The notes beneath the pieces were generated by a model that saw only the letters and a list, made by a program, of their open reading frames with translations, made no database searches and was not told the origin of the DNA. A stretch of DNA of 64,000 nucleotides, from the IMG/VR virus record IMGVR_UViG_3300046092_000062, positions 1 to 64,000 of that record; one strand, 5' to 3'. Of this stretch, positions 6,483-62,753 are shown piece by piece; the stretch's first letter is position 1; each line of letters opens with the position of its first letter. The translations under genes were made by a program, and so were the position numbers.

Positions 6483-6492
6483 GGAAAAGAAA

Positions 6493-6795
6493 ATGATTAC
6501 AAGCGTACAACTAACAACTACCGCAGCAAATATTATCTACGGTACAAGCACACAATCAAAGGGTATTACAGCGATGTATCTTTGCAATACCGATGGGACA
6601 TCAGCAACGGCTAACGTGTTCCTAGTACCAGCTGGTGGTACTGTAGCAGATTGCAGAATCTACAGCAATCTAAGCATTGCAGCATCTGATACACACATTT
6701 CAGATTTGGAGCGCATTGTCTTAGATGCAGGCGACAGTATCTGGGCAAACGCAAGTGGTAACATTGTAATGACCATTAGCTCAATGGGAGCTTAA
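6493..6795 (+). CDS. Small virion structural protein
   Basis: 100 aa, SD AAGGA, in structural operon. Confidence 0.5.
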   Translation: MITSVQLTTTAANIIYGTSTQSKGITAMYLCNTDGTSATANVFLVPAGGTVADCRIYSNLSIAASDTHISDLERIVLDAGDSIWANASGNIVMTISSMGA

Positions 6796-6797
6796 TA

Positions 6798-7226: not shown

Positions 7227-7237
7227 CGGAGAACTAG

Positions 7238-9271
7238 ATGGCAATCGGTAGAATATCAGGTTCAATGCTAGTGTCCAATTTGGACAGACAAGGCACGGAT
7301 CTACAGTTCACAACAAATAGTCAGCCATTATTCTACATGAACTTTAGTCAGTTCCGGACTGGCATTAACACAAACGTAGCGACCCAAACACTAACAATTA
7401 ACGGTAACCTAAGTACAAGTGGTATTCTAATTGATGGTAATACTATTTCTGCCTTAAACGGCGGAGCTGTTACATTTGCCGGTAACGCAAACTTAGGCCC
7501 AATCGGTAATGTTAAAATTACTGGTGGTACAAACGGGTACTTGATCTTTACAGACGGCGCAGGTAATTTGTCATTCGGCGATCCTAGTGTAGTAGTTGGA
7601 GAAACCATCAATGCAAACGTTATTTCATTAGGATCCAATGCAACAGGCTCTTTTAACAGCGCATTAACATTTACCAATACTACTAAAGTCACTGATGCAA
7701 TCGCAAGCCTAAACCAATTAGTTGGTACAGTCACTGATGCAACAGGTTCGGTGATTCATGTTGCTGGTAACATAACAGCGGGTAATGTAAATAGTAATTT
7801 CTACGGCAACGTAGTGGGCAATACTACTGGAATTCACACCGGTGACGTTAGCGGCAACATTACAGGCACAACAGCTTCGTTTACGAACGTATCTGGCACG
7901 TTATTAACAGCAAACCAACCCAACATTACCTCAGTTGGAACTCTTGTAGCTCTTAGTGTTACAGGTAACGTAGCAGCAGGCAATGTTTCGGCAGCTACCC
8001 TTAATGGTAGTCTTAGCGGAGTGGTACTTACACCTGCACAGCCAAATATTACCAGTGTTGGCTCCTTGACAAGTTTGGTAGTAACAGGAAACGTTCAAGC
8101 CGGTAATGTGTCTGCCACTCAATTCAATGGTGACACATTTGGCATTCATACTGGTAATGCAAGTGGAACAAGTGCTAGTTTTACTAGTATTGCAGGTACG
8201 TTAACTACTGCCGCACAAACTAACATTACCACAGTCGGTACTCTAATCAGTTTAGCAGTTACTGGAAACGTTAGTGCAGCAAATGTTAACGCAACAATGC
8301 ACGGAAACATTGTTGGGGCGTCGGCTTTGTTTAGCAGCAACGTAACATCCACTGGATTTATTGCAGTTGGTACCGGAGCCGATAATCGTGACGCAGGAGC
8401 TATTGGATTTGTAAACGACAGTTTTGGATTCACAACACAAAACAACGATGCGGTAGTGATTTTAAACGAGCAAGGTGTAACAGAACAAGTATTGTTCTTA
8501 GGCGACACAGGATTGGGTAACAGTGGAACACTATTAGGTGTAGCAGTTGGTAGTACTCCGGTTCTGAATTTAACAGGCGCCGGAGATCTAACAGTTACTG
8601 GAAACGTAAATGCAGGAACGTTTAACGGTGTCCATCACGGCAATGTTAGCTCAAACAACATCACGGGTATTAACGGCAATTTAACAATCACAGTTCCTGC
8701 AAACCAGGTAGCAATCTTTGCTTCAACTACTGCATTACAAATTCCATCAGGTGACGATGCTGCACGACCAGCTGGTGTTGCAGGATATACTCGCTATAAT
8801 ACTTCTAGCTCTGTCTTAGAGTATTACGATGGCGCAACTTGGGTTCCTGTAACTAACAAAGTTACAAGTCAGACGTTTAGCGGTAACGGAGTTGATGACA
8901 CGTTTGCACTAACTCGTGCAACCACGTTAGCCGGGGTGTTAGTGAGCATCAACGGTACATTGCAACAGCCGACAGTAGCATACACCATTGGACTAACTGG
9001 TGATACTATTACCTTTGCTGAAATTCCATTATCAACTGATGTAATTGAAATTCGTTTCTTGGGCGGCGTAACTAGTGTCAGCGGAACAGTTACTGGTGAC
9101 CTAAGCGTTCAAGGTAATGTTACATTAAGTGGAATATTAAAAGCTCCGCAAACAACTAAAGCATCAAACGCAATCGGAACACCTGGGCAAATTTGCTGGG
9201 ATGCCAACTACTTATATATCTGCACTGCAACAAATACGTGGAAACGCACGTTGCTATCTGGCGGATACTAA
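7238..9271 (+). CDS. Tail fibre / baseplate structural protein
   Basis: T/G/N-rich, repeated QPNITSVGTL..L.VTGNV units, RYNT..LEYYDG module. Confidence 0.7.
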   Translation: MAIGRISGSMLVSNLDRQGTDLQFTTNSQPLFYMNFSQFRTGINTNVATQTLTINGNLSTSGILIDGNTISALNGGAVTFAGNANLGPIGNVKITGGTNGYLIFTDGAGNLSFGDPSVVVGETINANVISLGSNATGSFNSALTFTNTTKVTDAIASLNQLVGTVTDATGSVIHVAGNITAGNVNSNFYGNVVGNTTGIHTGDVSGNITGTTASFTNVSGTLLTANQPNITSVGTLVALSVTGNVAAGNVSAATLNGSLSGVVLTPAQPNITSVGSLTSLVVTGNVQAGNVSATQFNGDTFGIHTGNASGTSASFTSIAGTLTTAAQTNITTVGTLISLAVTGNVSAANVNATMHGNIVGASALFSSNVTSTGFIAVGTGADNRDAGAIGFVNDSFGFTTQNNDAVVILNEQGVTEQVLFLGDTGLGNSGTLLGVAVGSTPVLNLTGAGDLTVTGNVNAGTFNGVHHGNVSSNNITGINGNLTITVPANQVAIFASTTALQIPSGDDAARPAGVAGYTRYNTSSSVLEYYDGATWVPVTNKVTSQTFSGNGVDDTFALTRATTLAGVLVSINGTLQQPTVAYTIGLTGDTITFAEIPLSTDVIEIRFLGGVTSVSGTVTGDLSVQGNVTLSGILKAPQTTKASNAIGTPGQICWDANYLYICTATNTWKRTLLSGGY

Positions 9272-9352
9272 TCTAAACCTACTTAATTCATTCTTTGCCG
9301 TAATTGGCAAGGAATGTCTTTTGGCTAAATATGTTATATTGGAGCGTTTGGC

Positions 9353-12300
9353 ATGGCCGTAACTAGAATTAAGAATAATCAGATCACTGATAGTACAATT
9401 ACCTATACCAAGATTGCGGCCGGCACATTAGTTGGTAGTAACTTTAACCAGGATTTAACATTAAATTCTAACATTAGCATTGTTGGTAACCTAACGGTAA
9501 CTGGAGTCTCTAGTTCGGTTAATAGTACAAACACATACGTTAATGACCCTATTGTGGTATTCAACAATGGGTACACTGGATCCCTAGCTGGATACGACAT
9601 TGGTATGCTAGTAAACCGTAACCTTGCTAGTTTAGCAGGATACGGAAGTGTGAACACAGCATGGGTTTGGGTCGAAGCAGATCAAGCCTTTGAGGCAATT
9701 ACTACAACCGATACTGGTAACGGAATAACAACAATTAACAACAGCGGTTTTGCTAACGTTAAAATTGGTAACTTAAATGCAGTAAGTGGATCGTTCTCTG
9801 GGACCATTGAGGCAACAACCTTAACTGGTTCTCATACTGGAACAGCAGCATTCAGCACAGCAACCGCGACTAACTTCTCAACTGGCAACGCACAAATTCT
9901 AGGTGGTAATGTACAAGGAATTGCATACTTACAAGCATCAAGTTTCTCAACTGGTAATGCGGTTATCACCGGTGGATCTTTAAACGCAATTTCAATTGGT
10001 GCAACTACTCCGGCAGCAGGGTTTTTTACTACTGCCACTTCTGCCCAATCGGTTATTACCGGTAATGCCAGTGTTGGCGGCAACCTAAGTGTAAACGGTA
10101 ATATTATTTTGGTTAGCGGTAACATTACAACTGCTAACTCTGCATTCTTTGTAGGTAACACAGTAACGGGCTTTAACGCTCTATACGCCGGCATCCCGGC
10201 AGGTTACGCAATCTTACCACAAGTGGTTGCTCAGTTCTCGGAAGATTACAACGGGTACGCACAACTCAACACACAAAACATTAACGCAGGCGGAAGTGCA
10301 ACCACTGACTACGTTGCCACAGCTAATAATGGATCTGATACAACATTTTATGTTGACCTTGGTATAGCAAGTGATGGGTACGATGGATCGAGCCCTAATA
10401 ATAGTTTAGGTACTGCACTATTCCAAAATGATGCGTACCTATATACTCAAGCAAATACTCCATCTAGTTACGGCGGTAACCTGGTGCTTGGTACAACTAC
10501 CGGACAGAGATTTGTTAAATTTGTAAGCGGTGGCGGCAACGTCGAGCACGTAGTAGTAGAAATGTCACATGCTGGCGCTACTTCAACATCAACCACATCT
10601 GGTGCGTTAACTGTTGTTGGTGGTATTGGCGCTACCGGAGACATTTACGCATCATCATTTAATGGCAACATCAACACATTAAATGCGTCTGTGACTAATC
10701 TAACTAGCGGCAATGTTCAGATCACAAGTGGATCAATCACTGGCATTACAGGCGCAGCAACTACTTTCGCAGCAACTAACTTTAGTTCTGGTAACGCACA
10801 AATCTCAGGTGGCAATGCTCAAGGCATTGTATATCTACAGTCCACAAATCTTAGCACAGGTAATGCTTTAATTACTGGCGGATCAATCACTGGCATTACA
10901 GGCGCAGCAACTACTTTCGCAGCAACTAACTTTAGTTCTGGTAACGCACAAATCACAGGTGGATCAGTAACTGGCGTCACTGGTGCAGCAACAACGTTAA
11001 CAGCAACTAACTTCAGTACAGGTAACGCACAGGTAACAGGCGGCAGCTTAATTAATTTTGATGCTCAATCAAATACATTTACTGCAACAAACTTCAGTAC
11101 AGGTAACGCACAGATCAGCGGCGGCTTTATCCAAGGTATCAACACTATTCAAGTTGATAACTTTTCAACTGGTAACGCTTTAGTTACTGGGGGCAGCTTA
11201 ACTGGAGTAACAGGTCAGTTTAATACCTTAGTTGCAACGAATTTTAGCAGCGGAAACATTGTTGGTGTTCTAACTGGCACAGCTAGTACCGCTAACGTTT
11301 CGTTGTATCAAACTGTAAACAATTCAGTAGTTAACACAGACTTCTACCCAGAATTTACAGACCGTTACACAACCGGTAACAGTGCAGCATACGTATCAGC
11401 AGCATTTAAGATGAATCCCTACACCGGCATATTCAGTGCAAGCGGTGTAAATGTTACTGCGGTAACTCCATCTAATTCAACTGGCTCTGGCGCACTAATC
11501 GTAACTGGTGGTGCAGGCATTGGTGGTAATTTGTATGTTGGTGCTGATGCAGTAGTAATTGGTAACTTAACAGTTCAAGGTACAATGACTGCTATCCAAT
11601 CGCAGACATTGGACGTAACAGATTTAAACATTACTGTAGCCAAAGGCGCAGGCAGTGCAGCAGCAGCCAATGGTGCAGGTATCACCGTTGATGGAGCAGC
11701 AGCGAGCTTGGTATATGCGTCAGCTACAGATAGCTGGAACTTTAACAAACAAGTAATTGGTCAGTTTACTACAAGTAATATACAAGCAACTGGCGGCTCA
11801 GTTACTGGCATCACTGGTGCAGCAACAACGTTAACAGCAACTAACTTTAGTTCTGGTAACGCACAAATCACAGGTGGTAATGCTCAAGGCATCGGATACC
11901 TACAATCAACAAATTTCTCAACTGGTAACGCATTAGTAACTGGCGGCTCAGTTACTGGCATCACTGGTGCAGCAACAACGTTCCATGTTGACAACTTTAG
12001 CAGTGGGAACATTGTTGGAGTGCTTACCGGAACTGCCAGCACAGCCAACGTTAGTTTATACTCTGAAGTAACAGACACAACTAACACTGCAAACTTCTAT
12101 CCAATGTTCACTGACAGGTCAACAGTTGGAAATAGTTCTGCGTTTGTTACTTCTGGTATCACAATGAATCCAGGGACTAATACAGTTCAAGCAACAACAT
12201 TCATTGGTACGTTCAATGGCACTGCATCTATTACCAGTGGATCTATTACTGGAGTAACGGGCGCAGCAACTTACTGGCATGCCAACAACTTTAGCTCAGC

Positions 12301-22877: not shown

Positions 22878-24500
22878 ATGCACCATAACGTAAAATCAAT
22901 TACCATCGTGGGCGGTGGATCAAGTGGATGGATGACAGCAGCAGCAATAGCTAGGCTTCTACCCAACATTAAACTAACTCTAGTTGAGAGTCCCAATATC
23001 CCTACTATTGGTGTAGGCGAAAGTACTATTGGACATATTAATCAATACCTAGCATTAATTGGTATTAAAGACGAAGACTGGATGGCAGCATGTAATGCAA
23101 CATACAAGACCAGTATCAAGTTCATTGACTTTAGAGAAAACCCAAAAGAAGAACCACACAAGTTTCATTACCCATTTGGTATCCTGGACTTTACAGATAA
23201 GCCACGCGGCCCAATGGAATGGTTTTTAGCAGCAGCCGATCGCGGCAATCTTGATCCCAGTAACTTTGCAGAGTTTTATCACGACAGTATTTTAATGACT
23301 GACAAGAATAAAATTACACGCAACGAGGATTACAAAATTCGTGGGTTTAACTTTAAAGAAGATACAGCGTACCACATGGATGCTACCTTATTCGGCGCAT
23401 GGCTCAGAGATAACCTGTGCTTACCAAGTGGTATGACTCACATTCTAGATACCGTCACTGACGTTGTGCAACGTGAAGATGGATCGATTGAAAAAGTTGG
23501 AACAGAGAACAGCGGATACCTTGAAGCAGACTTGTTTGTTGATTGTACTGGATTCAAGAGCTTGCTATTAGACCAAACTCTCAATGAGCCATTTACTAGC
23601 TTCCACGACACACTGTTAAATGATAGAGCAGTAGCTACAGTAATTCCCTACATTGACAAAGAAGCAGAAATGGAAAACTACACAAGCTGCACTGCCATTG
23701 AGTGCGGCTGGGTATGGAACATTCCATTATGGAATCGCATTGGCACAGGCTATGTTTATAGCAGCAAACATGCCACTGAAGAAGAAGCAGAAGCGCAATT
23801 CCGCAAACACCTAAAGAGCAATCGCATGATGTTTCCGGATGCAGAACGTGCAGACACATGTGAGCTAAGACATATTAAGATCAAGCACGGCGTCCATGAA
23901 CGTGCATGGGTCAAAAACGTAGTAGGTATCGGACTTGCTAACGGTTTCATTGAGCCACTGGAAAGTACAGGACTGATGCTAACGCACGAAGGGATTGTTA
24001 AATTATGCAATACTCTGTTAATGCGTAACGGCGTTGTTAGCAACTACGATGTAGATTTGTTTAACTATGGATTCCAAGAACAGATTCTAGGATTCAAAGA
24101 CTTTATCAGTCAGCACTATGCACTAAGCTGCCGCAACGATACTCCATACTGGAAAGAAGTTACAGGCGATTTAACGTATTCACGAGCAATGGGCGGGACT
24201 ATTAACTTGTCTGGGCTAGCACACGATGTACGGTCAGCGTCCGATTTGGGTATGCGTATGCACCGCACCCGAACATTTGATAACAACATGGGCGGGATTT
24301 TGTATATTGCAGCAGGACAGGGATACAATCCAGTTGAGCCAAACTACATAAGATACGAGGACACAAGACGCCACGAGTCGCCTGAACTGCGTGCCACTAT
24401 CTACGATAAATGGCTAGAGCACAAAGAAGAAGTAATGGCACACATCGAGACTTTGCCGACGCACTACCAATTCTTATACGATAACTTCTATAGCAAGTAA
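22878..24500 (+). CDS. Flavin-dependent (tryptophan) halogenase family protein
   Basis: GGGSSGWM, IGVGES, FVDCTGF, GWVWNIPL (WxWxIP), GFIEPLESTG. Confidence 0.92.
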   Translation: MHHNVKSITIVGGGSSGWMTAAAIARLLPNIKLTLVESPNIPTIGVGESTIGHINQYLALIGIKDEDWMAACNATYKTSIKFIDFRENPKEEPHKFHYPFGILDFTDKPRGPMEWFLAAADRGNLDPSNFAEFYHDSILMTDKNKITRNEDYKIRGFNFKEDTAYHMDATLFGAWLRDNLCLPSGMTHILDTVTDVVQREDGSIEKVGTENSGYLEADLFVDCTGFKSLLLDQTLNEPFTSFHDTLLNDRAVATVIPYIDKEAEMENYTSCTAIECGWVWNIPLWNRIGTGYVYSSKHATEEEAEAQFRKHLKSNRMMFPDAERADTCELRHIKIKHGVHERAWVKNVVGIGLANGFIEPLESTGLMLTHEGIVKLCNTLLMRNGVVSNYDVDLFNYGFQEQILGFKDFISQHYALSCRNDTPYWKEVTGDLTYSRAMGGTINLSGLAHDVRSASDLGMRMHRTRTFDNNMGGILYIAAGQGYNPVEPNYIRYEDTRRHESPELRATIYDKWLEHKEEVMAHIETLPTHYQFLYDNFYSK

Positions 24501-48127: not shown

Positions 48128-49207
48128 ATGGCAAAACCATTTGACGTAAGTAAATTTCGTAAGACTCTTACGAAAAGCATTGAAGGCCTGAGCGTAGGCT
48201 TTAACGACCCAACAGACTGGGTTAGCACAAACAATTTCGCACTTAACTACTTGATCAGCGGAGACTTTACAAAAGGTGTTCCAATGGGCAAGGTTACAGT
48301 GTTTGCTGGTGAATCCGGCGCAGGCAAGAGTTTCATCTGCTCGGGCAACTTAGTTGCCAACGCACAAAAGCAAGGCATTTTCCCTATCTTAATTGACACT
48401 GAAAACGCTCTTGATGAAAAGTGGCTACACGCATTGAACGTGGACACAAGCGAAGACAAGTTGCTGAAACTTAACATGGCTATGATCGACGACGTTGCTA
48501 AAATGATTAGCGAGTTTGTTAAAGAATACAAAGCCATGCCAGAAGACCAACGCCCTAAGGTCTTGTTTATTCTCGACTCGTTAGGTATGTTGTTGACTCC
48601 AACTGACGTTAACCAGTTTAATGCAGGTGACATGAAGGGTGACATGGGTCGTAAGCCTAAAGCACTTACTGCACTTGTTCGTAACTGTGTAAACATGTTT
48701 GGCGATTTGAACTTGGGCTTGGTTGCAACTAACCACACATACGCATCGCAAGATATGTTTGACCCAGACGACAAAATCTCCGGTGGTCAAGGCTTTATCT
48801 ACGCTAGCTCTATTGTAGTTGCTATGCGCAAGTTGAAGTTGAAGGAAGACGAAGACGGTAACAAGGTATCCGAAGTTAAGGGTATCCGTGCTGCATGTAA
48901 GATCATGAAGACACGTTACGCAAAGCCGTTTGAGTCAGTTCAAGTTAAGATCCCATACGAAACAGGTATGAACCCATACTCTGGTATGACTGACTTAATT
49001 GAAGCCAAAGGCATGTTGAAGAAAGAAGGCAACAGCCTTGTTTACACAACAGTCGATGGCGAGATTATCAAGAAGTTCCGCAAGGCATGGGAACGCAACG
49101 ATGACGGTTGCTTGGATACAGTAATGGCAGACATTACAAACAATCCACACATCTTTGACAAGAGTGTTGCAGAAGACGCTCCTGATATTGAAGAAGCAGC
49201 AGAGTAA
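48128..49207 (+). CDS. uvsX: RecA-like recombinase (UvsX)
   Basis: GESGAGKS P-loop, IDTENAL, DSLGML, NHTY, SGGQG..YASS. Confidence 0.95.
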   Translation: MAKPFDVSKFRKTLTKSIEGLSVGFNDPTDWVSTNNFALNYLISGDFTKGVPMGKVTVFAGESGAGKSFICSGNLVANAQKQGIFPILIDTENALDEKWLHALNVDTSEDKLLKLNMAMIDDVAKMISEFVKEYKAMPEDQRPKVLFILDSLGMLLTPTDVNQFNAGDMKGDMGRKPKALTALVRNCVNMFGDLNLGLVATNHTYASQDMFDPDDKISGGQGFIYASSIVVAMRKLKLKEDEDGNKVSEVKGIRAACKIMKTRYAKPFESVQVKIPYETGMNPYSGMTDLIEAKGMLKKEGNSLVYTTVDGEIIKKFRKAWERNDDGCLDTVMADITNNPHIFDKSVAEDAPDIEEAAE

Positions 49208-50145
49208 TGCTACTAAAGGACATCAAGAGCTTACATGTTGAACTAAGCTCAAAATGTAATGCTTGGTGTCCTAGTTGTGCTCGAAATAAAAATGGATTTG
49301 GCCTCAAAGACGGCCTGGTACCGCAGAATCTAGTAGTTGACAAGCTACGCACTGCAATCGACGCATTGCCTGGTTTGACCAAAGTACAGTTCTGCGGTCG
49401 CTACGGAGATCCGGCTATTCACCCAGACTTGAGTGAAATCCTTGACTGGACTATTCCGCGAGTGAAACAGATTACGATCCACACAAATGGAAGTGTGCGA
49501 AATGCAGACTGGTGGGCGGAAATCGGCTGCAAGTTAAGCAATACAGATCATAGAGTCTGGTTTGGGATCGATGGCCTAGCAGGAGTCCACGAGATATATA
49601 GACAGGGCACGGACTTTGACAAAGTGATTGAAAACGCAACAGCATTTATCAACGCAGGCGGCAAAGCAGTTTGGCAATTTATTCCATTTAAGCACAACGA
49701 GCACCAACTTAATGCTTGCATTAAGCTAGCGAATCAGTTAAAATTCGCAGACTTTGAATTAGTTGAGGGAGTGCGTAACGTTGAGACAGCACGAAACTAT
49801 CGTACAGGCGAAGAGTTTATTCTTGAGCCTTGGACAAAAGATCAAACCTTTAACTTCAGAGTGAACCATGAGCGAAAGTTAAGTACAAAGAATTGTGCCC
49901 ACCTTGAAGCTCCTGGGCTATATATAACAGCTAGCGGAAAGTACACTTTGTGCTGCCACTTTGACCCGTTTGATGATAGGTTTGATCCAATTGGATTTGA
50001 CACCATTGAAGAAACAGAACAATTGGATATCGCTAGTGAAATAAATACCCAGCCTAGACCGTTATGTGTTTTTGCATGTGCCGGGCTAAAGATGGATCGT
50101 AAACTAATACCGTTAACAAAATTAAGGAAATCAAATGAGCATTGA
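49207..50145 (+). CDS. Radical SAM protein with SPASM/twitch-like C-terminus
   Basis: CNAWCPSC (CxxxCxxC), GDP, TNGS, later Cys cluster. Confidence 0.9.
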   Translation: MLLKDIKSLHVELSSKCNAWCPSCARNKNGFGLKDGLVPQNLVVDKLRTAIDALPGLTKVQFCGRYGDPAIHPDLSEILDWTIPRVKQITIHTNGSVRNADWWAEIGCKLSNTDHRVWFGIDGLAGVHEIYRQGTDFDKVIENATAFINAGGKAVWQFIPFKHNEHQLNACIKLANQLKFADFELVEGVRNVETARNYRTGEEFILEPWTKDQTFNFRVNHERKLSTKNCAHLEAPGLYITASGKYTLCCHFDPFDDRFDPIGFDTIEETEQLDIASEINTQPRPLCVFACAGLKMDRKLIPLTKLRKSNEH

Positions 50146-56957: not shown

Positions 56958-56986
56958 TTGACACTTAATGAAATGGCTGCTATAAT
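56958..56986 (+). promoter_or_regulatory. Consensus sigma70 promoter (second at 57053-57081, TTGTCC-N17-TACAAT)
   Basis: TTGACA-N17-TATAAT. Confidence 0.92.
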
Positions 56987-57181
56987 ACACACATGTTAAG
57001 AAATTAGCATAAAGTGCAGAGTAGCATAAAAACAACAGTTAGAAAATAACAGTTGTCCAATAAAGAAATTGGTGCTACAATACATACATGTTAAACAAAC
57101 AACGCAGCGCAGTGATCGTACTGTAATGCTAACAGTCTTTAAAAAGATACTGTCATATATCCCTGTTAAGTTCAGGGCTCT

Positions 57182-57262
57182 ATATGCAAACACATTAATT
57201 AACCTGGAGTGCGGTCACAGGGCATCGCAAGGTGTGGTAGCCGTGTTAATGTGTTTACATAT
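57182..57262 (+). ncRNA. Closed-stem RNA element, copy 1
   Basis: ATATGCAAACACATTA ... TAATGTGTTTACATAT. Confidence 0.6.
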
Positions 57263-57265
57263 AGT

Positions 57266-57340
57266 GGAGCTATCGTCTATCGGTTAGGACATCTGGTTTT
57301 CATCCAGGCAAGCGGGGTTCGATTCCCCGTAGCTCTTCCA
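57266..57340 (+). tRNA. trnE: tRNA-Glu(TTC)
   Basis: Loop TTTTCAT; CCA. Confidence 0.88.
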
Positions 57341-57414
57341 AGTTTTTACATTGTTTAAACCGCGGCTGATTTTAAAGTCGGATGAAGGCGAAACTAACAA
57401 TGTGATTCTATTTT

Positions 57415-57559
57415 GTGCTTCATACTATCAATTGGGAGAGCATTACCTAAAACACTAAGTAGGACATCGACAGTAAAGGCCAGTGGCCTAGGATGTGTAA
57501 GCCGTAAGTATACGGTATGTTCAGGTGATGTGTGTAGGTTCGAATCCTACTGATGTACA
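57415..57559 (+). ncRNA. tRNA-like RNA with ~75-nt insert in the anticodon loop
   Basis: Acceptor GTGCTTC/GATGTAC-A (G3:U70), TTACCT/AGGTGA stem around insert, GTAGG-TTCGAAT-CCTAC T-arm; CCA not encoded. Confidence 0.6.
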
Positions 57560-57567
57560 CAAGTTAT

Positions 57568-57719
57568 GCGGGGTCTCACATGGTGTGGCTGAAGAGATTG
57601 ATCACTCGGAGGCGAATGCGAAAATGCGAGGCCTTATGCAAGCAACCCCAAAGAGTAATTCCGAGTAAGGCACTGTAAGCATAAGGGCTTTCAGGGTTCG
57701 AATCCCACGCCCTGCACCA
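57568..57719 (+). ncRNA. tRNA-like RNA with pseudoknotted insert replacing the anticodon loop
   Basis: GCGGGGT/GCCCTGC-A-CCA (G3:U70), TTCGAAT T-loop; ACTCGGA/TCCGAGT and CCTTATGC/GCATAAGG helices cross. Confidence 0.65.
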
Positions 57720-57787
57720 ATCAAGACACATCAAAGTAGCGACTATTGCTGGAGGCGGTAGCACGTAATTAGTGTGTCGAGTTTTTC

Positions 57788-57926
57788 GTGGTAAGTCTGG
57801 AGACAAGTTATTTGACTGTATGCGTAGCAGGATTGCAAACCCGAGGGGCATATGGCGATGGGAAGTGATATCACCCGTTTGTAAAAACAGATGACTAGTT
57901 GGGTTCAACTCCCAATTACTACACCA
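57788..57926 (+). ncRNA. tRNA-like RNA (139 nt) with Ala-type acceptor and long insert
   Basis: GTGGTAA/TTACTAC-A-CCA (G3:U70); TTGGG-TTCAACT-CCCAA T-arm. Confidence 0.65.
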
Positions 57927-58000
57927 TATGCAAACACATTATACAAACCTGAATCAGCAATAGCATTGCAAAGGTTTAAATGTGTAGTGTGTTTACATAT
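57926..58000 (+). ncRNA. Closed-stem RNA element, copy 2
   Basis: Same ATATGCAAACACATTA / TGTGTTTACATAT ends as 57182, different interior. Confidence 0.6.
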
Positions 58001-58002
58001 TG

Positions 58003-58183
58003 TGTTGTTAAGGCTGATGACGGCAATCTGAAAGCAGTCTGAAATCTGACCCTGAAACAAAGTAGCTTTGCCGAGCGAATGTAGACGGAGTCTCTATAGT
58101 GTAGTGGAAGCACACCGGCATAATACGCCGGGGGCCTAGGTTCGATTCCTAGTAGGGTTTATTAGATATCAGCCTTAACAGCA
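58003..58183 (+). ncRNA. Long hairpin RNA enclosing a tRNA-like domain with AAT anticodon
   Basis: TGTTGTTAAGGCTGAT/ATCAGCCTTAACAGCA outer stem; inner D-arm, CCGGC-ATAATAC-GCCGG, CTAGG-TTCGATT-CCTAG; no CCA. Confidence 0.55.
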
Positions 58184-58195
58184 TAAAGAAATAAT

Positions 58196-58281
58196 GGGGA
58201 TACGGCGCAGTTGGAGAGGCGCGGCAGACTGTAAATCTGTTTCCACTGGATGAGTTGGTTCGAATCTAACTATCCCCACCA
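58196..58281 (+). tRNA. trnY: tRNA-Tyr(GTA)
   Basis: Loop CTGTAAA, long variable arm; CCA. Confidence 0.92.
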
Positions 58282-58282
58282 A

Positions 58283-58740
58283 GAATACTAAGACAACACT
58301 TAGTAAGATGAGTAGACGGAAACCGACCCGGGAGAGAATTCCCGGGCTTCAATAATACGAATCACCGGCGAAACGCTGCGGGTCCCGCCCGCTGTATTAT
58401 TGACGAACGATAAGCAAAGTCGGTCCAGTAGGGGTAAGAAAAGTGTTGTTAGCGGAAAGAGCTGCAACGAGACAGAAGTTAAGCGGGCATAGGCCGACAG
58501 TTTAACGCCGTGTATTCTCGAACTAATTCAAGAATTGATCGGAAAGCAAGAGCCGAAGAGTAGACACTAGCGAATGGCGGGCTGCGTTCGCATAAGTTGG
58601 GATAACTGACTAGTAGGGTAAGAGTCCCTAGTATGCCTCCTAATTCACAAATGTAAGATAGTTGCAAATGCGTCCTGCAGGTAAGTTTGCAACCGTAACA
58701 TCACAGACGGGCGACTCTGTGTAAGAAATACGACCCAGAA
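58283..58740 (+). ncRNA. Large (~450 nt) multi-domain structured ncRNA candidate
   Basis: No credible ORF; many hairpins plus long-range ACAACACTT/AAGTGTTGT and CAATAATAC/GTATTATTG helices, between tRNAs. Confidence 0.6.
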
Positions 58741-58746
58741 ATTTAT

Positions 58747-58822
58747 GCTCCATTAGCTCAATTGGGAGAGCGCGACACTGTCACTGTCGAGGTAAGCGGA
58801 TCGAAACCGCTATGGGGCGCCA
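58747..58822 (+). tRNA. trnD: tRNA-Asp(GTC)
   Basis: CGACA-CTGTCAC-TGTCG; CCA. Confidence 0.92.
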
Positions 58823-58829
58823 GTTTTAT

Positions 58830-58904
58830 ATCCTGTTAGATTATCGGTTAGATCAACAGCCTTTCAAGTTGTAGAGACGGGTTCGATTCCCGTACAGGAT
58901 GCCA
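58830..58904 (+). tRNA. trnE: tRNA-Glu(TTC)
   Basis: Loop CTTTCAA, G73; CCA. Confidence 0.9.
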
Positions 58905-58909
58905 GTTAT

Positions 58910-58996
58910 GGATAGTAGTGTGCATGGTGCCGAGTTGGTTTGCTAAACCGATCTACTGCGAAAGCGGTAACAGTTCGATTCTGTTTCTATCCTCCA
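58910..58996 (+). tRNA. trnS: tRNA-Ser(GCT)
   Basis: Loop TTGCTAA, long variable arm; CCA. Confidence 0.88.
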
Positions 58997-59003
58997 AGTT
59001 TTA

Positions 59004-59078
59004 GCGGGTAAGGTGTTTACGGATACACACTAGTCTTCCAAACTTGAGTAGTCGGTTCGATACCGACTACCCGCTCCA
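59004..59078 (+). tRNA. trnG: tRNA-Gly(TCC)
   Basis: Loop CTTCCAA, U73; CCA. Confidence 0.9.
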
Positions 59079-59085
59079 AGTTAAT

Positions 59086-59160
59086 GCCGTGGTAGCTCTC
59101 TGGGAGGGTGCCTCACTGTCGATGAGTTTTAGGCGGGTTCGATTCCCGTCCACGGCGCCA
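59086..59160 (+). tRNA. trnD: tRNA-Asp(GTC)
   Basis: Loop CTGTCGA (G37); CCA. Confidence 0.88.
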
Positions 59161-59163
59161 GTT

Positions 59164-59366
59164 TTGTAAGTGTCAGCAAGAGAAAGTCACGCTATACAAT
59201 ATTCTTCGAAGGTGTTGTATAGTAAAAGGTTAATGGGTTCGAATCCCACCGTGCGCGGGCCATTTGGAGGCTGTACTGGACAAGTATTCCTAGTGGCAGA
59301 CTGCCCCCGTCCGGACTTGTTAATTCGGGTGAAGCGTTGAGATAACAGCGGCTCAACTACTTACAA
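59164..59366 (+). ncRNA. ~200-nt structured RNA with an internal T-loop hairpin
   Basis: TTGTAAGT/ACTTACAA closing stem; GGG-TTCGAAT-CCC at 59235-59247; CTATACAA/TTGTATAG hairpin. Confidence 0.55.
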
Positions 59367-59375
59367 ATTCAATTT

Positions 59376-59450
59376 ACCCGGTTAGCTCAGTGGTAGAGCA
59401 GCGGCTTGATAAGCCGTTGGTCGCAAGTTCAAATCTTGCATCGGGTACCA
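59376..59450 (+). tRNA. trnI: tRNA-Ile(GAT)
   Basis: GCGGC-TTGATAA-GCCGT; CCA. Confidence 0.92.
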
Positions 59451-59459
59451 AAATTTATA

Positions 59460-59487
59460 TTGACATACACAGTTTGTCATATATAAT
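59460..59487 (+). promoter_or_regulatory. Sigma70 promoter
   Basis: TTGACA-N16-TATAAT. Confidence 0.85.
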
Positions 59488-59495
59488 AGTGTTAT

Positions 59496-59571
59496 TGGCA
59501 TATAGCTCAGTTGGTAGAGCGCTTGACTGTTAATCAAGATGTCCCTGGTTCGAGCCCAGGTTTGCCAGCCA
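59496..59571 (+). tRNA. trnN: tRNA-Asn(GTT)
   Basis: CTTGA-CTGTTAA-TCAAG; CCA. Confidence 0.93.
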
Positions 59572-59577
59572 AATTTC

Positions 59578-59651
59578 GCCCCATTAGTTAAATGGTAGAA
59601 CACCGGTTTTGTAATCCGGGGATAGCAGTTCGATTCTGTTATGGGGCACCA
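59578..59651 (+). tRNA. trnT: tRNA-Thr(TGT)
   Basis: Loop TTTGTAA; CCA. Confidence 0.9.
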
Positions 59652-59658
59652 AGGTTAT

Positions 59659-59732
59659 AGCGGGTAGGGCGGCCACCACTCCAGTCTCATAAGCTCGGAG
59701 CATCGCAAGTTCAAATCTTGCACCCGCATCCA
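59659..59732 (+). tRNA. tRNA-CAT with 1:72 mismatch and reduced D-arm (initiator-like?)
   Basis: Loop CTCATAA; A1/A72 unpaired; CCA. Confidence 0.7.
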
Positions 59733-59737
59733 TATAA

Positions 59738-59813
59738 GGGGGATTAGCTCATTTGGGAGAGCGGCTGCTTTGCAAGCAGTAGGTGACCAGTTCGATCCTG
59801 GTATCCTCCACCA
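59738..59813 (+). tRNA. trnA: tRNA-Ala(TGC)
   Basis: Loop TTTGCAA; G3:U70; CCA. Confidence 0.93.
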
Positions 59814-59924
59814 ATATTCACTGAACCAGCAGTAAGCTGGAATGTATAGTAGACGAGAATTAGTGTACTGCTATATGTCTGACACGGACTTGAGTGGACA
59901 GCCCACAGTGTTGTAAATCATATT

Positions 59925-60001
<77 letters not shown>

Positions 60002-60005
60002 ATTT

Positions 60006-60080
60006 GCGTCTGTAGTACAATGGAAAGTACACTAGGCTACGAACTTAGGAATGGTGGTTCGATTCCATCCAGACGCACCA
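60006..60080 (+). tRNA. trnR: tRNA-Arg(ACG)
   Basis: Loop CTACGAA; CCA. Confidence 0.92.
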
Positions 60081-60098
60081 ATCAACAAAGGAAATACA

Positions 60099-60527
60099 AT
60101 GTCAGCATTCAAAGTATTGCGCGGTGAGCGCATTAACGGAATCTTTCTAGGCAACGACAGCTGGGCATTAGTATTCCGTACAGTCAACGGCAAGTATTTT
60201 CGTTTTGACACTCAGAACGATTGTTGCAACAGCGTGTGGTTCAATCACATTAATGGTGCTACTATCCTAGGTGAAGGCAACAGCTTTGACCTATTGCGCG
60301 GCGCATTAGTGACTGAAACAGAAGACAAGGGTTGGGGCGATAATCGCGAAGAAGACGGATACGAAGTAGTTCAAGACGGGTTCTGGACTATCAAAACCGA
60401 CCGCGGCTACATTGATATTGAAGTGCGTAACAGCCACAATGGCTACTACGGCGGATCAGTTAAGCACATCGAAGACTTTGAGCTTGACCAAATCGAAGGC
60501 TTAAAGCAAGTTACGGAAGATTTTTAA
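60099..60527 (+). CDS. Hypothetical protein
   Basis: AAGGA SD; DCCNSVWF and RNSHNGYYGG motifs. Confidence 0.7.
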   Translation: MSAFKVLRGERINGIFLGNDSWALVFRTVNGKYFRFDTQNDCCNSVWFNHINGATILGEGNSFDLLRGALVTETEDKGWGDNREEDGYEVVQDGFWTIKTDRGYIDIEVRNSHNGYYGGSVKHIEDFELDQIEGLKQVTEDF

Positions 60528-60537
60528 AAGGGTAGTT

Positions 60538-60747
60538 ATGTCAAATAGTAGAAACACTTCGTCAGCAGCAGTAGAGCAAGTAGGCAACCGATTTGATTTG
60601 GTGCTTATTGCAAGTGCGCGAGCACGTGAACTCAAGCGAGGACATGCTGCAAAAGTAAGTGGTGCCGGCGGCATTACTGCAACAGTGTTGAAAGAAATTG
60701 AAGAAGGAAAAATTGGCCGCGAGTACTTGAAAAAGTTGCGCGACTAA
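60538..60747 (+). CDS. rpoZ: RNA polymerase omega subunit
   Basis: AVEQVGNRFDLVLIASARAREL..G....V.....AT.L.EIEEGKI. Confidence 0.88.
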   Translation: MSNSRNTSSAAVEQVGNRFDLVLIASARARELKRGHAAKVSGAGGITATVLKEIEEGKIGREYLKKLRD

Positions 60748-60754
60748 GAGTTAT

Positions 60755-60829
60755 GGAGTTGTTAGTTTAGTGGCAAAACCGCGGGTTGTGATTCCGCTAT
60801 CACGGGTTCGATTCCCGTACTTCTCCCCA
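60755..60829 (+). tRNA. trnH: tRNA-His(GTG)
   Basis: Encoded G-1:C73; loop TTGTGAT; CCA. Confidence 0.92.
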
Positions 60830-60938
60830 GAGCCTCGCCGTTGCTAGTGGCGTATAATAGGATAAATTATTAGCACACAGACCCCGTCTTTGGGCAATCG
60901 GACGTTAAACGGTTGTCCACCAATTCATTAAATACTGT

Positions 60939-61997
60939 ATGAAGATAATTGATTGCGATAGCCATTACCTACCACCTACAGTATTTGACCATGTACCAGA
61001 GCATCTAAGGCATTTGTTGCCTACGTTTGATTTCTCGGTTGACGGAAAGTTAAATCGCGTAAATTTTGAAATTGATCCAGTTAAAATTAGTGAAGGTAAG
61101 CCGCCTGAGTCGTTTGGGCAGACTGCCGGAGTAACTAACATTGACAGCAGGATTGAGGATTTTGCTAAGTTAAAAATCACAAAGCAACTGTTGTGTCCGC
61201 AAGAGCTTGCTATGCGGTTTAACTATTCTGTTGAACCAGAACTAGCCGCTGCAATGTGCAGAAGCTACAATATAGAGATTAAGAAAGTGGTTGACGCACA
61301 TCCTGACAAGTTCTTTGCAACTGCACTAGTACCATTGCAGGACATGAAGGCAGCAACAGTTGAACTCAATTGGGCTATACGTCACGGATTTAAAGCAGTA
61401 TATCTTGATAACTCGTTTATATCTGCAGATGGCACAAGTATGCCTACCATGTGTATGCCTGATATTAGTGATCTAATTGAAATCTGTGCAATGCAGAGAA
61501 TAACAATTTATTTTCATAGCATGATGCACCACGTGTTTCCCTTTGACGATCATTATCGCAAATTGCAAAGATTTTTACCCGGGTCAATCCAGCTAAACAT
61601 ATACAGCTTATTGATGTCTGGTATTTTTGATCGTTACCCTGTAATGCAGGTAGTATTCGCAGAAGGGGCAGATGTACATGCGATGCGATCGTACAATACA
61701 GTGCAGGGAGTATTTGAGCGTAAGCTGCCAGACGTACAAATGAAAAATCATCCGCTAGTGTATTTTAAAAATAACATCAGCTTTACAGTTGACATAGAGA
61801 ATACTGCTCTAATGCAACTGCTAATAAAAACTTTCGGAAGCGAACGATTGCTGTTCAGTACAGATTATCCGCACGATGACGAGTCGGGACTAAACCAATT
61901 GCACGACGTGGACGATTTGATTGCATTAAAATTAAGCAATAATGATTTAGAGAACATCGCTTACAAAAACGCCGAACGAATTTTTCGGTTAGTATAG
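60939..61997 (+). CDS. Amidohydrolase-2 family metal-dependent hydrolase/decarboxylase
   Basis: IIDCDSHY, YFHSMMH, LLFSTDYPHDD, NAERIF. Confidence 0.88.
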   Translation: MKIIDCDSHYLPPTVFDHVPEHLRHLLPTFDFSVDGKLNRVNFEIDPVKISEGKPPESFGQTAGVTNIDSRIEDFAKLKITKQLLCPQELAMRFNYSVEPELAAAMCRSYNIEIKKVVDAHPDKFFATALVPLQDMKAATVELNWAIRHGFKAVYLDNSFISADGTSMPTMCMPDISDLIEICAMQRITIYFHSMMHHVFPFDDHYRKLQRFLPGSIQLNIYSLLMSGIFDRYPVMQVVFAEGADVHAMRSYNTVQGVFERKLPDVQMKNHPLVYFKNNISFTVDIENTALMQLLIKTFGSERLLFSTDYPHDDESGLNQLHDVDDLIALKLSNNDLENIAYKNAERIFRLV

Positions 61998-62003
61998 AAT
62001 TGT

Positions 62004-62077
62004 TGGGGATTAGTTAAACGGTATAACTACGGATTTTGATTCCGTCATTAGTGGTTCGATTCCACTATCCTCTGCCA
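62004..62077 (+). tRNA. trnQ: tRNA-Gln(TTG)
   Basis: ACGGA-TTTTGAT-TCCGT; CCA. Confidence 0.9.
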
Positions 62078-62224
62078 AAATTTCATATCCTGTACGAACG
62101 GCAGCTCTTGCTTTTCAGGATAATCTCGTGTAAAATGTTTAACACAAGAGAAGCTCTTAGCATCGGAATAAGTTCCGTTGCCGAGTTTAAGTAATTCATC
62201 GAATCCAGGATTGGGTTTGCTCAT
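62048..62224 (-). CDS. Small antisense late protein (58 aa)
   Basis: Start preceded by TAAATA-CAGT, the spacing seen for other late genes; 3' end overlaps tRNA-Gln. Confidence 0.4.
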   Translation of the reverse strand: MSKPNPGFDELLKLGNGTYSDAKSFSCVKHFTRDYPEKQELPFVQDMKFWQRIVESNH

Positions 62225-62249
62225 ACTGTATTTAACACAAGGAAACAAA

Positions 62250-62753
62250 ATGCCCTGGATCCAAAACGTAGCACGTAGCGATGTCACTAAAGGGTTTCAC
62301 ATCAACCCCGGTGATAACGCTATGTTGATTCAAATCGTTGACTGCGGCAGCGAATTTCCTACTCCCCTTTACAAGTTTAAAGAAGCTCATCAATTTGAGT
62401 TTTTAGATGTAGAGGAAAAGGACTACGTTCTTGAAGAAGAAATGAAGTGCAGTCACGAACAAGCCGCAGAGCTAGTTCGTTTGTTGCAACATGCACTAGA
62501 GAATCGCATGAACGTTATTGTTCATTGCCATGCTGGTGTTTGCCGCAGCGGTGCAGTATGTGAAGTTGGAGTCATGCTTGGCTTTGATGACACTGAAGCA
62601 TTTCGTGCTCCTAACTTGCTAGTCAAGCATCGCATGATGAAGCAGCTGGGTTGGACGTATGATGAGAACGAAGAGCCAACGATCAATGGTCAACCATATC
62701 AATACAGCGCAGGCGGGATCATTTTACCCCCAAGTCACGAAGGTGATATTTAA
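62250..62753 (+). CDS. Cys-dependent (PTP/DSP-type) phosphatase
   Basis: HCHAGVCRS = HCxxGxxR signature; AAGGA SD. Confidence 0.85.
   Translation: MPWIQNVARSDVTKGFHINPGDNAMLIQIVDCGSEFPTPLYKFKEAHQFEFLDVEEKDYVLEEEMKCSHEQAAELVRLLQHALENRMNVIVHCHAGVCRSGAVCEVGVMLGFDDTEAFRAPNLLVKHRMMKQLGWTYDENEEPTINGQPYQYSAGGIILPPSHEGDI

What the first reader, a model, noticed from the sequence alone, without database searches (positions are those of the whole stretch)
58283..58740. ~450-nt ornate non-coding RNA candidate inside the tRNA array
Seen: a region without a credible ORF, packed with hairpins (CCCGGGA/TCCCGGG, GCGAA/TTCGC, ACTAG..GGG/CCC.TAGT, GTTGCAAA/TTTGCAAC, CACAGA/TCTGTG) and long-range helices (58293-58301 with 58441-58449), bounded by tRNA-Tyr and tRNA-Asp that could release it. 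Established: large ncRNAs such as GOLLD and ROOL occur among phage tRNA genes. I cannot tell by eye whether this is one of them or new.
Basis: partly seen in the sequence, partly recalled or inferred. Interest (0 to 1): 0.62.

Follow-up and report, generated by a model that had tools for sequence, protein, structure and literature searches.

The report
Three small structured phage RNA genes
The 465-base gap between two tRNA genes of this uncultured freshwater jumbo phage holds three separate, conserved, pseudoknotted small-RNA genes from previously undescribed families, not one large RNA, and what they do is still unknown.

Summary
There is no ORF over 62 aa, and all the hairpins it listed, plus the long-range helix 58293-58301/58441-58449, are kept by compensatory changes in relatives.

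The interpretation of one ~450-nt RNA of the GOLLD/ROOL kind does not hold. Rfam 15 gives no hit. The interval splits into three modules:
- A: 58283-58529
- B: 58530-58645
- C: 58647-58746

Each belongs to its own family in tRNA islands of uncultured jumbo phages, with 88, 33 and 21 distinct sequences collected. The modules occur in different orders, alone, separated by tRNAs, or (A) behind their own promoter. Complete genomes carry A without B, or B without A.

Covariation supports each fold, including a pseudoknot in each module. A's signature is absent from 185,579 prokaryote species genomes but present in 77 metagenome contigs. Metatranscriptome contigs from two studies cover A at 25-40 times the depth of its flanks.

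Best reading: these are trans-acting RNA genes co-transcribed with tRNAs and cut out by tRNA processing. The function is only inferred. A resemblance of A to the RNase P core that I saw by eye failed every statistical test.

The parts
56958..56986 (+). Perfect sigma-70-type promoter (TTGACA-17-TATAAT). It is the likely start of the transcription unit that contains the element.
   Evidence: 12 of 12 matches. The next such promoter on the + strand is at 59460-59487.
58196..58281 (+). tRNA-Tyr(GTA) ending in CCA. It forms the 5' boundary of module A.
58283..58529 (+). Module A, a ~245-nt pseudoknotted RNA gene. The 3' limit is approximate.
   Evidence: nhmmer and alignment A2. Structure counts. 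RNA contigs cover 58287-58520 and depth drops from 58521. A joint 57721->58284 in an RNA contig marks the 5' edge.
58287..58304 (+). A: 5' hairpin H1 (58287-58291 / 58300-58304). Its loop, 58293-58299, is the 5' strand of the pseudoknot.
   Evidence: The outer 3 bp are invariant, the inner 2 pairs are kept in only 20 of 36 sequences, and the loop covaries with 58443-58449.
58310..58326 (+). A: near-invariant block GAGTAGACGGAAACCGA. Its last 5 nt (58322-58326) can pair with 58420-58424.
   Evidence: The proposed pairing is invariant, so covariation cannot test it (helix 3).
58327..58346 (+). A: hairpin H3 (CCCGGG...CCCGGG).
   Evidence: helix 4: 5 of 6 pairs with changes on both sides.
58349..58403 (+). 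A: variable hairpin H4. Here it is a three-way branch; in relatives it is as short as CAC-GAAA-GTG.
   Evidence: helix 6, all 3 pairs covary. An RNA contig replaces 58352-58400 with CGAAAG.
58417..58434 (+). A: most conserved block, AAGTCGGTCCAGTAGGGG.
   Evidence: It is also conserved in sequences that were found with a different search pattern.
58443..58449 (+). A: 3' strand of the pseudoknot (GTGTTGT).
   Evidence: helix 2: 6 of 6 pairs with double changes, for example ACAACA/TGTTGT versus TTGTTT/AAACAA.
58450..58467 (+). A: hairpin H5 with the conserved loop GGAAAGAGCT.
   Evidence: helix 7: 82% of cells paired, 2 pairs with double changes.
58468..58520 (+). A: helix H6 (58468-58472 / 58516-58520). 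It encloses CAGAAG, hairpin H7 (58479-58505) and the conserved CGCCGTGTAT (58506-58515).
   Evidence: helices 8 and 9: all 9 pairs with double changes.
58530..58645 (+). Module B, a ~115-nt RNA gene. It has hairpin Pa (58539-58556), long-range P2 (58566-58569 / 58611-58614), P3 (58570-58591), a small hairpin (58595-58607), a GGG-TAAGAGT-CCC hairpin (58616-58628) and a 3' tail (58629-58640) that pairs with the P3 loop in relatives.
   Evidence: Alignment A3. Counts: 94.4% paired and 12 of 18 pairs with double changes. Loop-tail complementary runs of 8-10 bp.
58647..58746 (+). Module C, a ~100-nt RNA gene. It has P1 (58661-58668 / 58686-58693) with the palindromic loop CCTGCAGG (58674-58681), P2 (58702-58706 / 58717-58721) and a 3-bp pseudoknot (58709-58711 / 58734-58736).
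   Evidence: Alignment A5. Counts: 98.6% paired and 7 pairs with double changes.
58747..58822 (+). tRNA-Asp(GTC). RNase P cleavage at its 5' end would create the 3' end of module C.
   Evidence: The cleavage itself is inferred.

Best explanation
The interval is a tandem of three independent small-RNA genes, A (~245 nt), B (~115 nt) and C (~100 nt). Each folds into a compact structure with a pseudoknot. Each belongs to its own family, and these families move as cassettes among the tRNA islands of uncultured freshwater and wastewater jumbo phages.

In this phage the three are transcribed with about twelve tRNAs from the promoter at 56958-56986. They would be released by the host's tRNA-processing enzymes: RNase P at the 5' end of the next tRNA, and RNase Z, RNase E or exonucleases behind the previous one. 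Module A then persists as a discrete, abundant RNA. The modules act in trans as folded RNAs, not as coding sequence, spacers or cis-regulators.

Shown:
- modularity
- the folds
- restriction to phage and metagenome DNA
- accumulation of A in RNA libraries

Inferred:
- the processing route
- the function

My preferred function (about 0.35) is binding or decoying of host RNA-handling or tRNA-targeting proteins during takeover. That would fit accessory, patchily distributed cassettes sitting in tRNA islands. The next option (about 0.25) is self-assembling RNA-only particles in the manner of ROOL and GOLLD, hinted at by C's conserved palindromic loop.
For: Modularity:
- A and B lie in the order A-B here and in L126 and L132, but B-A in L124 and L135.
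- In L129 a tRNA-Tyr separates A from C.
- In L133, A alone fills a Tyr-Asp gap.
- The 100% complete records G011 and G015 and the 98% complete G012 have B but not A's 17-mer at up to 3 mismatches.
- The complete genomes G016 and G020 have A but not B.
- In L143 and L136, A has its own TTGACA/TATAAT promoter and no tRNA nearby.

Folds:
- A: 92.9% of cells paired, 26 of 41 pairs with double changes, 0 of 500 shuffles as high; slid controls pair 25-41% of cells.
- B: 94.4% paired, 12 of 18 pairs with double changes, plus a loop-tail pseudoknot.
- C: 98.6% paired, 7 pairs with double changes.

Distribution:
- A's 25-nt signature gives 0 hits in one genome each of 185,579 prokaryote species.
- It gives 77 metagenome contigs and 46+13 viral contig stretches.
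- It lies adjacent to tRNAs.

Expression:
- RNA-library contigs cover 58287-58520 at depth 444-589 (X20) and 116-194 (X22).
- The neighbouring tRNA-Tyr bin has depth 5-14 and the B/C bins 0-11.
- The two runs come from two different studies.

Transcription unit: perfect promoters at 56958 and 59460, and none between them.
Against: - No function was tested.
- The RNA evidence comes from assembled contigs, not raw reads. It cannot show RNA ends or strand. Part of the depth comes from related phages laid at 90% identity or more.
- B and C are barely covered in those libraries.
- The processing enzymes are assumed from general tRNA biology.
- Nothing points specifically to the decoy idea. No module mimics an anticodon arm.
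- The palindrome covariation in C rests on one variant sequence (L246).
Confidence: 0.7

Rival explanations
1. One ~450-nt ornate RNA, a relative or analogue of GOLLD/ROOL, works as a single molecule.
For: The three modules are contiguous here and in L108/L126, with no tRNA between them. GOLLD and ROOL lie near phage tRNA islands (PMC12286853).
Against: - No Rfam hit, even at E<=10.
- The modules are reordered, separated by tRNAs, or present alone in complete genomes.
- RNA contig depth falls about 40-fold at the A/B boundary.
- No covarying pair links the modules (one search covers A only; the B and C helices are all internal).
Confidence: 0.05
2. Module A is a circularly permuted, S-domain-less RNase P-like ribozyme. 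On this reading AAGUCGGU with ACCGA..CUU is P4, the variable hairpin is P3, H6/H7 is P15-17 and the pseudoknot is P6. The phage would then bring its own pre-tRNA 5'-processing activity.
For: By eye against the RF00010 consensus:
- AAGUCGGUCCAGUAGGG versus AAGUCCGGgCucCAuAGGg.
- GGAA-ACCGA...CUU versus AGAA-CCCGGCUU.
- A variable hairpin plus a purine-rich joiner lies 5' of AAGUC.

The location in tRNA islands fits. B's hairpin loop GUAAGAG equals the loop of the P13/14-region hairpin of RNase P: the B profile hits that spot in 7 RNase P RNAs at E 0.14-0.5.
Against: - RF00010 finds nothing in the whole phage genome at E<=10 or in either module order.
- The best local alignment of A to E. coli M1 RNA scores 19, against 18.1+-2.4 for shuffles.
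- The A profile against 104 RNase P RNAs gives only E>=40, and not at the proposed blocks.
- The putative P4 pairs never vary, so they are untested. L208 changes the G of AAG without compensation.
- B's GUGG/CCAC is a local covarying hairpin, not P10/11.
- A and B are not co-inherited.
- No rnpA gene is present.
Confidence: 0.05
3. Passive material: decayed tRNA genes, or spacers whose only role is to fold so that neighbouring tRNAs are processed correctly. No trans function.
For: The array holds many tRNA-like remnants. B's terminal hairpin resembles a T arm (repeat finder family D7). The position between tRNAs fits.
Against: - 17-18-nt unpaired blocks are invariant across 88 distinct sequences, with compensatory changes in the helices.
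- A occurs with its own promoter away from tRNAs.
- A accumulates far above the flanking tRNA bins in RNA libraries.
- ARAGORN and the tRNA covariance model find nothing here.
Confidence: 0.08
4. A small protein is encoded, for example by the 62-aa or 55-aa ORFs on the minus strand.
For: ORFs of 62 aa (58479-58667, minus strand) and 55 aa (58300-58467, minus strand) exist.
Against: Relatives differ by hairpin-sized insertions and deletions and by paired substitutions that keep helices, not reading frames. Both ORFs cross module boundaries that are broken in other phages. All tRNAs and promoters run on the + strand.
Confidence: 0.02

Closest known systems
GOLLD and ROOL RNAs (Rfam RF01998, RF03087)
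   Same: They are structured non-coding RNAs of phages and prophages, often beside tRNA islands. They have multiple pseudoknots, no known protein partner and unknown function, and kissing loops hold their oligomers together (PMC12286853). Module C has a conserved palindromic loop that could do the same.
   Different: There is no covariance-model match. The modules are 100-245 nt, against ~580 nt for ROOL (my recollection) and over 800 nt for many GOLLD RNAs. Here there are three unrelated units rather than one large RNA, and no oligomer has been shown.
Stable RNAs C and D (species 1 and 2) of the phage T4 tRNA gene cluster.
   Same: They are small stable non-tRNA RNAs encoded inside a phage tRNA operon and released by tRNA-type processing. 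Their function is still unknown.
   Different: blastn of the 465 nt against 50,697 phage records, which should include T4-like phages, found no similarity. The host range and structures differ.
Bacterial RNase P RNA, class A (RF00010)
   Same: Short motif-level resemblances: the AAGUC..CCAGUAGGG block of A, and the GUAAGAG hairpin loop of B. Both have a link to tRNA biology.
   Different: - No model or profile match.
- The similarity is not above shuffles.
- The order of elements would need a circular permutation.
- There is no S-domain.
- A and B are inherited separately.

Membership tests
GOLLD (RF01998) | Match to the family covariance model | tested here: not met
   cmscan finds no hit at the gathering score or at E<=10 on 57300-59400.
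GOLLD (RF01998) | A single large RNA, with many members over 800 nt | tested here: not met
   The interval is 465 nt and splits into units of 245, 115 and 100 nt.
ROOL (RF03087) | Match to the family covariance model | tested here: not met
ROOL / GOLLD | Homo-oligomeric nanocage | not testable with these tools
   This needs native gels or cryo-EM. The only hint is C's palindrome CCUGCAGG, which becomes CCAGCUGG in L246.
RNase P RNA class A (RF00010) | Match to the covariance model | tested here: not met
   Whole genome at E<=10: none, while the control search matched in 11 of 14 control genomes. The window in A-B order and L124 in B-A order: none.
RNase P RNA class A (RF00010) | Sequence similarity of the conserved regions CR-I and CR-V above chance | tested here: not met
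   Local alignment to M1 RNA scores 19, against a shuffle mean of 18.1. The A profile against 104 RNase P RNAs gives E>=40.
RNase P RNA class A (RF00010) | A P4 helix formed by two distant conserved strands | tested here: inconclusive
   ACCGA/UCGGU and CUU/AAG can pair but never vary (helices 3 and 5). One uncompensated change occurs in L208.
RNase P RNA class A (RF00010) | A specificity domain (P7-P14) in the same molecule or always supplied with it | tested here: not met
   A has only an 18-nt hairpin at that position. B is absent from the complete A-bearing genomes G016 and G020.
tRNA / tmRNA | A cloverleaf or tRNA-like domain detectable by ARAGORN or RF00005 | tested here: not met
   No call inside 58282-58746, with or without intron search.
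Cis-regulatory leader or riboswitch | A constant position upstream of a gene class | tested here: not met
   What follows varies: tRNAs of many kinds, other RNA modules, or nothing coding.

The most novel reading that the evidence does not exclude
Module A is a natural, circularly permuted, minimal RNase P-like ribozyme carried by jumbo phages. More broadly, these phage tRNA islands carry a shuffled toolkit of catalytic or self-assembling RNAs (A, B, C, the 215-nt module at 59161-59375 and others) that act on the tRNA pool.
Probability: 0.05. Interest if true: 0.95.

Novelty: new member of a known kind. Interest (0 to 1): 0.6.

Why it matters
Phage tRNA islands are already known to hold enigmatic large RNAs (GOLLD, ROOL). 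This locus suggests that in one widespread group of freshwater jumbo phages the islands are also packed with smaller RNA cassettes. These cassettes are unrelated to one another, strongly conserved, pseudoknotted and exchanged between phages. At least one of them is among the more abundant phage RNAs in lake metatranscriptomes.

That gives three new RNA families with good alignments and testable folds. They are small enough for chemical probing, crystallography or cryo-EM. It also gives a concrete question: what do phages gain from non-tRNA RNAs that ride on tRNA processing? If any module proves catalytic, or turns out to be a decoy for host tRNA-targeting defences, it would link tRNA islands to a new layer of phage-host conflict.

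Tried and rejected
Searches that found no homologue:
- blastn (distant mode) of the 465 nt against 50,697 phage records: no match.
- Paralogues in the phage's own genome: none.
- Loci around amidohydrolase homologues: not syntenic, no match.
- Eighty loci around terminase homologues and ten whole related records, including the 98% complete G001: no homologue by nhmmer or BLAST.
- A covariance model of A's core (R1) also found nothing in G001 or in the B-only loci.

The breakthrough came from the neighbouring DUF7448 gene, followed by exact-pattern scans.

Hypotheses rejected:
- Two-piece RNase P (A as catalytic domain, B as specificity domain). A and B are not co-inherited, B's 5' hairpin is local, and the sequence tests failed.
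- rnpA in the phage: absent.
- Group I intron, hammerhead, tmRNA, T-box and riboswitch classes were considered from motif memory. None has Rfam support.
- An apparent extra covariation between A columns 28-29 and 124-127 looks like a two-clade signal rather than a helix.

Calls that failed:
- One count call failed on string length.
- One literature call failed on a two-letter term.

The five completed literature searches for a phage-encoded RNase P or for described tRNA-island RNAs of this kind found nothing relevant beyond GOLLD and ROOL.

Full report
**Setting**

The window is the first 64 kb of a 320,767-bp IMG/VR virus record, 92% complete by CheckV. It encodes a tail sheath, a tail tube and a large terminase. 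A tRNA island runs from 53990 to about 76400 and holds 48 tRNA genes, all on the + strand. The record also has a permuted tmRNA and a CUA-anticodon tRNA elsewhere. The finding is the 465-nt gap 58282-58746 between tRNA-Tyr and tRNA-Asp.

**Checking the observation**

No ORF exceeds 62 aa. The fold energy is only modestly better than shuffles (z = -2.23), so the single sequence proves little. Rfam 15 reports nothing in the gap at gathering scores or at E<=10 with relaxed filters. That rules out GOLLD, ROOL, RNase P, tmRNA, group I introns and all other curated families, as far as covariance models can see.

**Finding relatives**

Direct DNA searches failed:
- the INPHARED phage collection
- the phage's own genome
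- 85 loci around amidohydrolase and terminase homologues
- ten related records searched whole

The small DUF7448 gene 1.3 kb downstream then led to a 354-kb contig with the same tRNA order and a 343-nt version of the element. That version showed the mosaic typical of structured RNA: identical unpaired blocks, hairpins replaced by others of different length, and paired substitutions.

Exact scans of IMG/VR with conserved blocks gave the following:
- 13 stretches with a 21-mer from module A
- 46 with a second A block
- 46 with a B block
- 7 with a C block, of which 4 are true homologues

A 25-nt A signature gave 77 metagenome contigs and none in one genome each of 185,579 prokaryote species.

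**The element is modular**

Profile searches show that the window's 465 nt are three units.
- Module A (58283-~58529) and module B (~58530-58645) are in the order A-B here and in L126 and L132, but B-A in L124 and L135.
- In L129, A is followed by a tRNA-Tyr and then by module C.
- In L133, A alone fills a Tyr-Asp gap exactly.
- In L134, B lies about 700 nt and three tRNAs upstream of A.
- The 100% complete records G011 and G015 and the 98% complete G012 carry B but not A's most conserved 17-mer at up to 3 mismatches.
- The 100% complete records G016 and G020 carry A but not B.
- C follows a tRNA CCA end directly in L151 and L213 and occurs in 27 of the loci held.
- In L143 and L136, A is not in a tRNA array at all. 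It sits a few bases behind a TTGACA-17-TATAAT promoter, and the same promoter recurs 500 nt downstream in front of a protein gene.

So A, B and C are separate genes that recombine as cassettes.

**Structures**

*Module A* (36-sequence alignment A2; 88 distinct sequences after adding metagenome hits). Its elements in order are:
- a 5' hairpin whose loop (58293-58299) pairs with 58443-58449
- the near-invariant block GAGUAGAYGGAAACCGA
- hairpin H3
- a variable hairpin H4 of 10-100 nt
- a purine-rich joiner that forms a 3-bp GNRA hairpin in one subtype
- the invariant block AAGUCGGUCCAGUAGGG
- hairpin H5
- helix H6, which encloses CAGAAG, hairpin H7 and CGCCGUGUAU

On A2 the proposed structure pairs 92.9% of cells, against 78.9% for shuffled partners and 25-41% for slid partners. 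Twenty-six of 41 pairs change on both sides, and 0 of 500 shuffles reach any of the five measures. The pseudoknot is the best-supported helix: all six pairs covary, for example ACAACA/UGUUGU against UUGUUU/AAACAA. The two helices made of invariant blocks (ACCGA/UCGGU and CUU/AAG) cannot be tested. The inner two pairs of H1 are not kept.

*Module B* (33 sequences, A3). Its elements in order are:
- a hairpin (GUGG/CCAC, UCGG/CCGA, GCGG/CCGC, UCGA/UCGA) with a 9-10-nt loop
- the joiner AAAGUAAA
- a long-range helix P2 that closes a multi-branch region with P3 and one or two further hairpins
- a GGG-UAAGAGU-CCC hairpin
- a 3' tail that pairs with the P3 loop

Counts are 94.4% paired and 12 of 18 pairs with double changes. 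Loop-tail runs of 8-10 bp, with different sequences in different lineages, occur where about 4.7 is expected. In this window's own copy the loop-tail run is only 4 bp, no better than shuffled tails.

*Module C* (21 sequences, A5). It has two hairpins, a 3-bp pseudoknot (GGG/CUC, GGG/CCC, GGU/ACC) and an 8-nt palindrome, CCUGCAGG, in the P1 loop. The one variant of that palindrome, CCAGCUGG, is again a palindrome. Counts are 98.6% paired and 7 pairs with double changes. The palindrome hints at a loop-loop dimer, but it rests on a single variant.

**Transcription and processing**

Two perfect sigma-70-type promoters lie on the + strand at 56958-56986 and 59460-59487, with none between them. A, B and C therefore most likely sit on one ~2.5-kb precursor with about twelve tRNAs.

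Among 67 full-length A copies in metagenome contigs, 20 of 58 with an upstream tRNA abut its CCA end. About 22 of 59 lie within 7 nt of the next tRNA. Tyr, Glu and Asp are the commonest tRNAs upstream, and Asp is the commonest downstream. Release by RNase P and the 3'-end tRNA nucleases is the natural inference, but it is not shown.

**Expression**

Twenty-four public runs hold the region. Six are metatranscriptomes. Contigs of four RNA runs were laid on 57000-60500.
- Bins 58287-58403 and 58404-58520 have summed contig depths of 589 and 444 in X20, and 116 and 194 in X22. These runs come from two studies.
- The tRNA-Tyr bin before them has depth 14 and 5. The B and C bins after them have 11 and 0-8.
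- A 149-nt contig spans 58287-58435 with 5 differences.
- One contig joins 57721 (the CCA end of a tRNA-like gene) to 58284.
- Another replaces 58352-58400 with CGAAAG. This is the short-H4 variant seen in L108.

So A, including variants from related phages, accumulates as an RNA whose limits match the module.

Caveats: these are assembled contigs, so ends and strand are not shown. Depth sums over relatives laid at 90% identity or more. DNA carry-over cannot be excluded formally, although a 30-40-fold step within 100 nt is hard to explain by DNA.

**The RNase P lead**

While reading the alignments I noticed several resemblances to the RNase P core:
- A's invariant AAGUCGGUCCAGUAGGG resembles the P4/P5/J5-7 stretch of bacterial RNase P RNA.
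- GGAA-ACCGA..CUU resembles J2/4 plus the P4 3' strand.
- A variable hairpin plus a purine joiner sits where P3 and J3/4 would be.
- B's GUAAGAG loop equals that of the P13/14-region hairpin.

I fetched E. coli rnpB and the RF00010 consensus and 104 further RNase P RNAs to test this. The tests were negative:
- RF00010 finds nothing in the whole phage genome or in either module order.
- A's best local alignment to M1 RNA (score 19) equals the shuffle mean of 18.1+-2.4.
- The A profile against the 104 RNAs gives only E>=40, and at a trivial CCGGGCU match rather than at the proposed blocks.
- The B profile hits the GGUAAGAG hairpin at E 0.14-0.5. That is a shared loop motif, not homology.
- B's supposed P10/11 strand is a local covarying hairpin.
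- A and B are not co-inherited.
- No rnpA gene is present.

I keep this reading at about 5%, because the catalytic-core helices are invariant and so cannot be tested by comparison.

**What it most likely is**

These are three new families of trans-acting structured RNAs that use the tRNA precursor, or their own promoter, for expression. Several properties are those of accessory host-takeover or counter-defence cargo rather than core phage functions:
- their patchy, cassette-like spread among related phages
- their absence from cellular genomes
- their placement in the most variable and defence-relevant part of the genome
- the abundance of A

Which partner they bind is unknown. A decoy or inhibitor role toward host RNA-processing or tRNA-cleaving proteins, and self-assembly like ROOL and GOLLD (PMC12286853), are the two options I rank highest. 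Neither is tested.

**Novelty**

There is no Rfam 15 family and no relevant paper in five completed full-text searches. The kind of thing is known: non-tRNA structured RNAs in phage tRNA islands, such as GOLLD, ROOL and, from my own knowledge, the T4 stable RNAs C and D. The families themselves appear to be new.

Read laying was given 3,501 letters. No alternative genetic code was used. The large protein searches were not needed.

Noticed in passing
window 59161-59375: A fourth conserved non-tRNA module of ~215 nt fills the gap between tRNA-Asp and tRNA-Ile. It has a tRNA-like 5' part: a long arm with the palindromic loop UUCGAA, plus a T-arm. Homologues occur in 42 held loci. RNA-library contigs cover 59200-59313 at depth 360-3,300 per contig, and the summed bins reach 580-11,700 in all four metatranscriptomes. 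A back-joint 59369->59162 appears in three of them, which suggests a tandem copy in relatives or a circular RNA. Rfam has no hit.
   Followed up: partly
window 57412-57560, 57567-57719, 57779-57926: Three ~150-nt genes end in a T-arm, an acceptor strand and CCA, but carry about 70 extra nucleotides. ARAGORN misses them, or in one case calls a tRNA-Ile with a 46-nt intron. Each has homologues in 6-11 other loci, and their order is permuted in L108.
   Followed up: partly
window 58000-58018 / 58168-58186: A 19-nt inverted repeat (89% complementary) brackets tRNA-Ile(AAT) at 58089-58161. Similar long stems bracket tRNA-like pieces downstream of module A in L136 and L143.
   Followed up: no
genome G000 180876-181270 and 187515-187589 (outside the window): ARAGORN calls a permuted (two-piece) tmRNA with the tag ANDEQFLMVA, and a tRNA with anticodon CTA (an amber suppressor).
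   Followed up: no
window 4743-4822: A match above the gathering score to the Rfam 'freshwater-2' motif (56.6 bits). It straddles the junction between the ORFs 3866-4735 and 4751-5770.
   Followed up: no
window 56958-56986 and 59460-59487: Two 12-of-12 sigma-70 consensus promoters lie inside the tRNA island. The second sits directly in front of tRNA-Asn. The same promoter-plus-leader sequence drives module A and a protein gene in L143.
   Followed up: partly
L135:5213-5400: The first 29 nt of module A are duplicated on both sides of module B. This looks like a recombination scar from an A-B-A arrangement.
   Followed up: no
L124:960-1174: The gap after module A holds a short ORF. By eye it looks like a homing-endonuclease fragment, which could explain cassette shuffling. 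It was not tested against any protein family.
   Followed up: no
window 22878-24500, 48128-50145, 60051-62753: Accessory genes near or within the island: a tryptophan-halogenase-like protein, a RecA-like ATPase, a radical-SAM protein, DUF7448, an amidohydrolase and a dual-specificity phosphatase-like protein.
   Followed up: no
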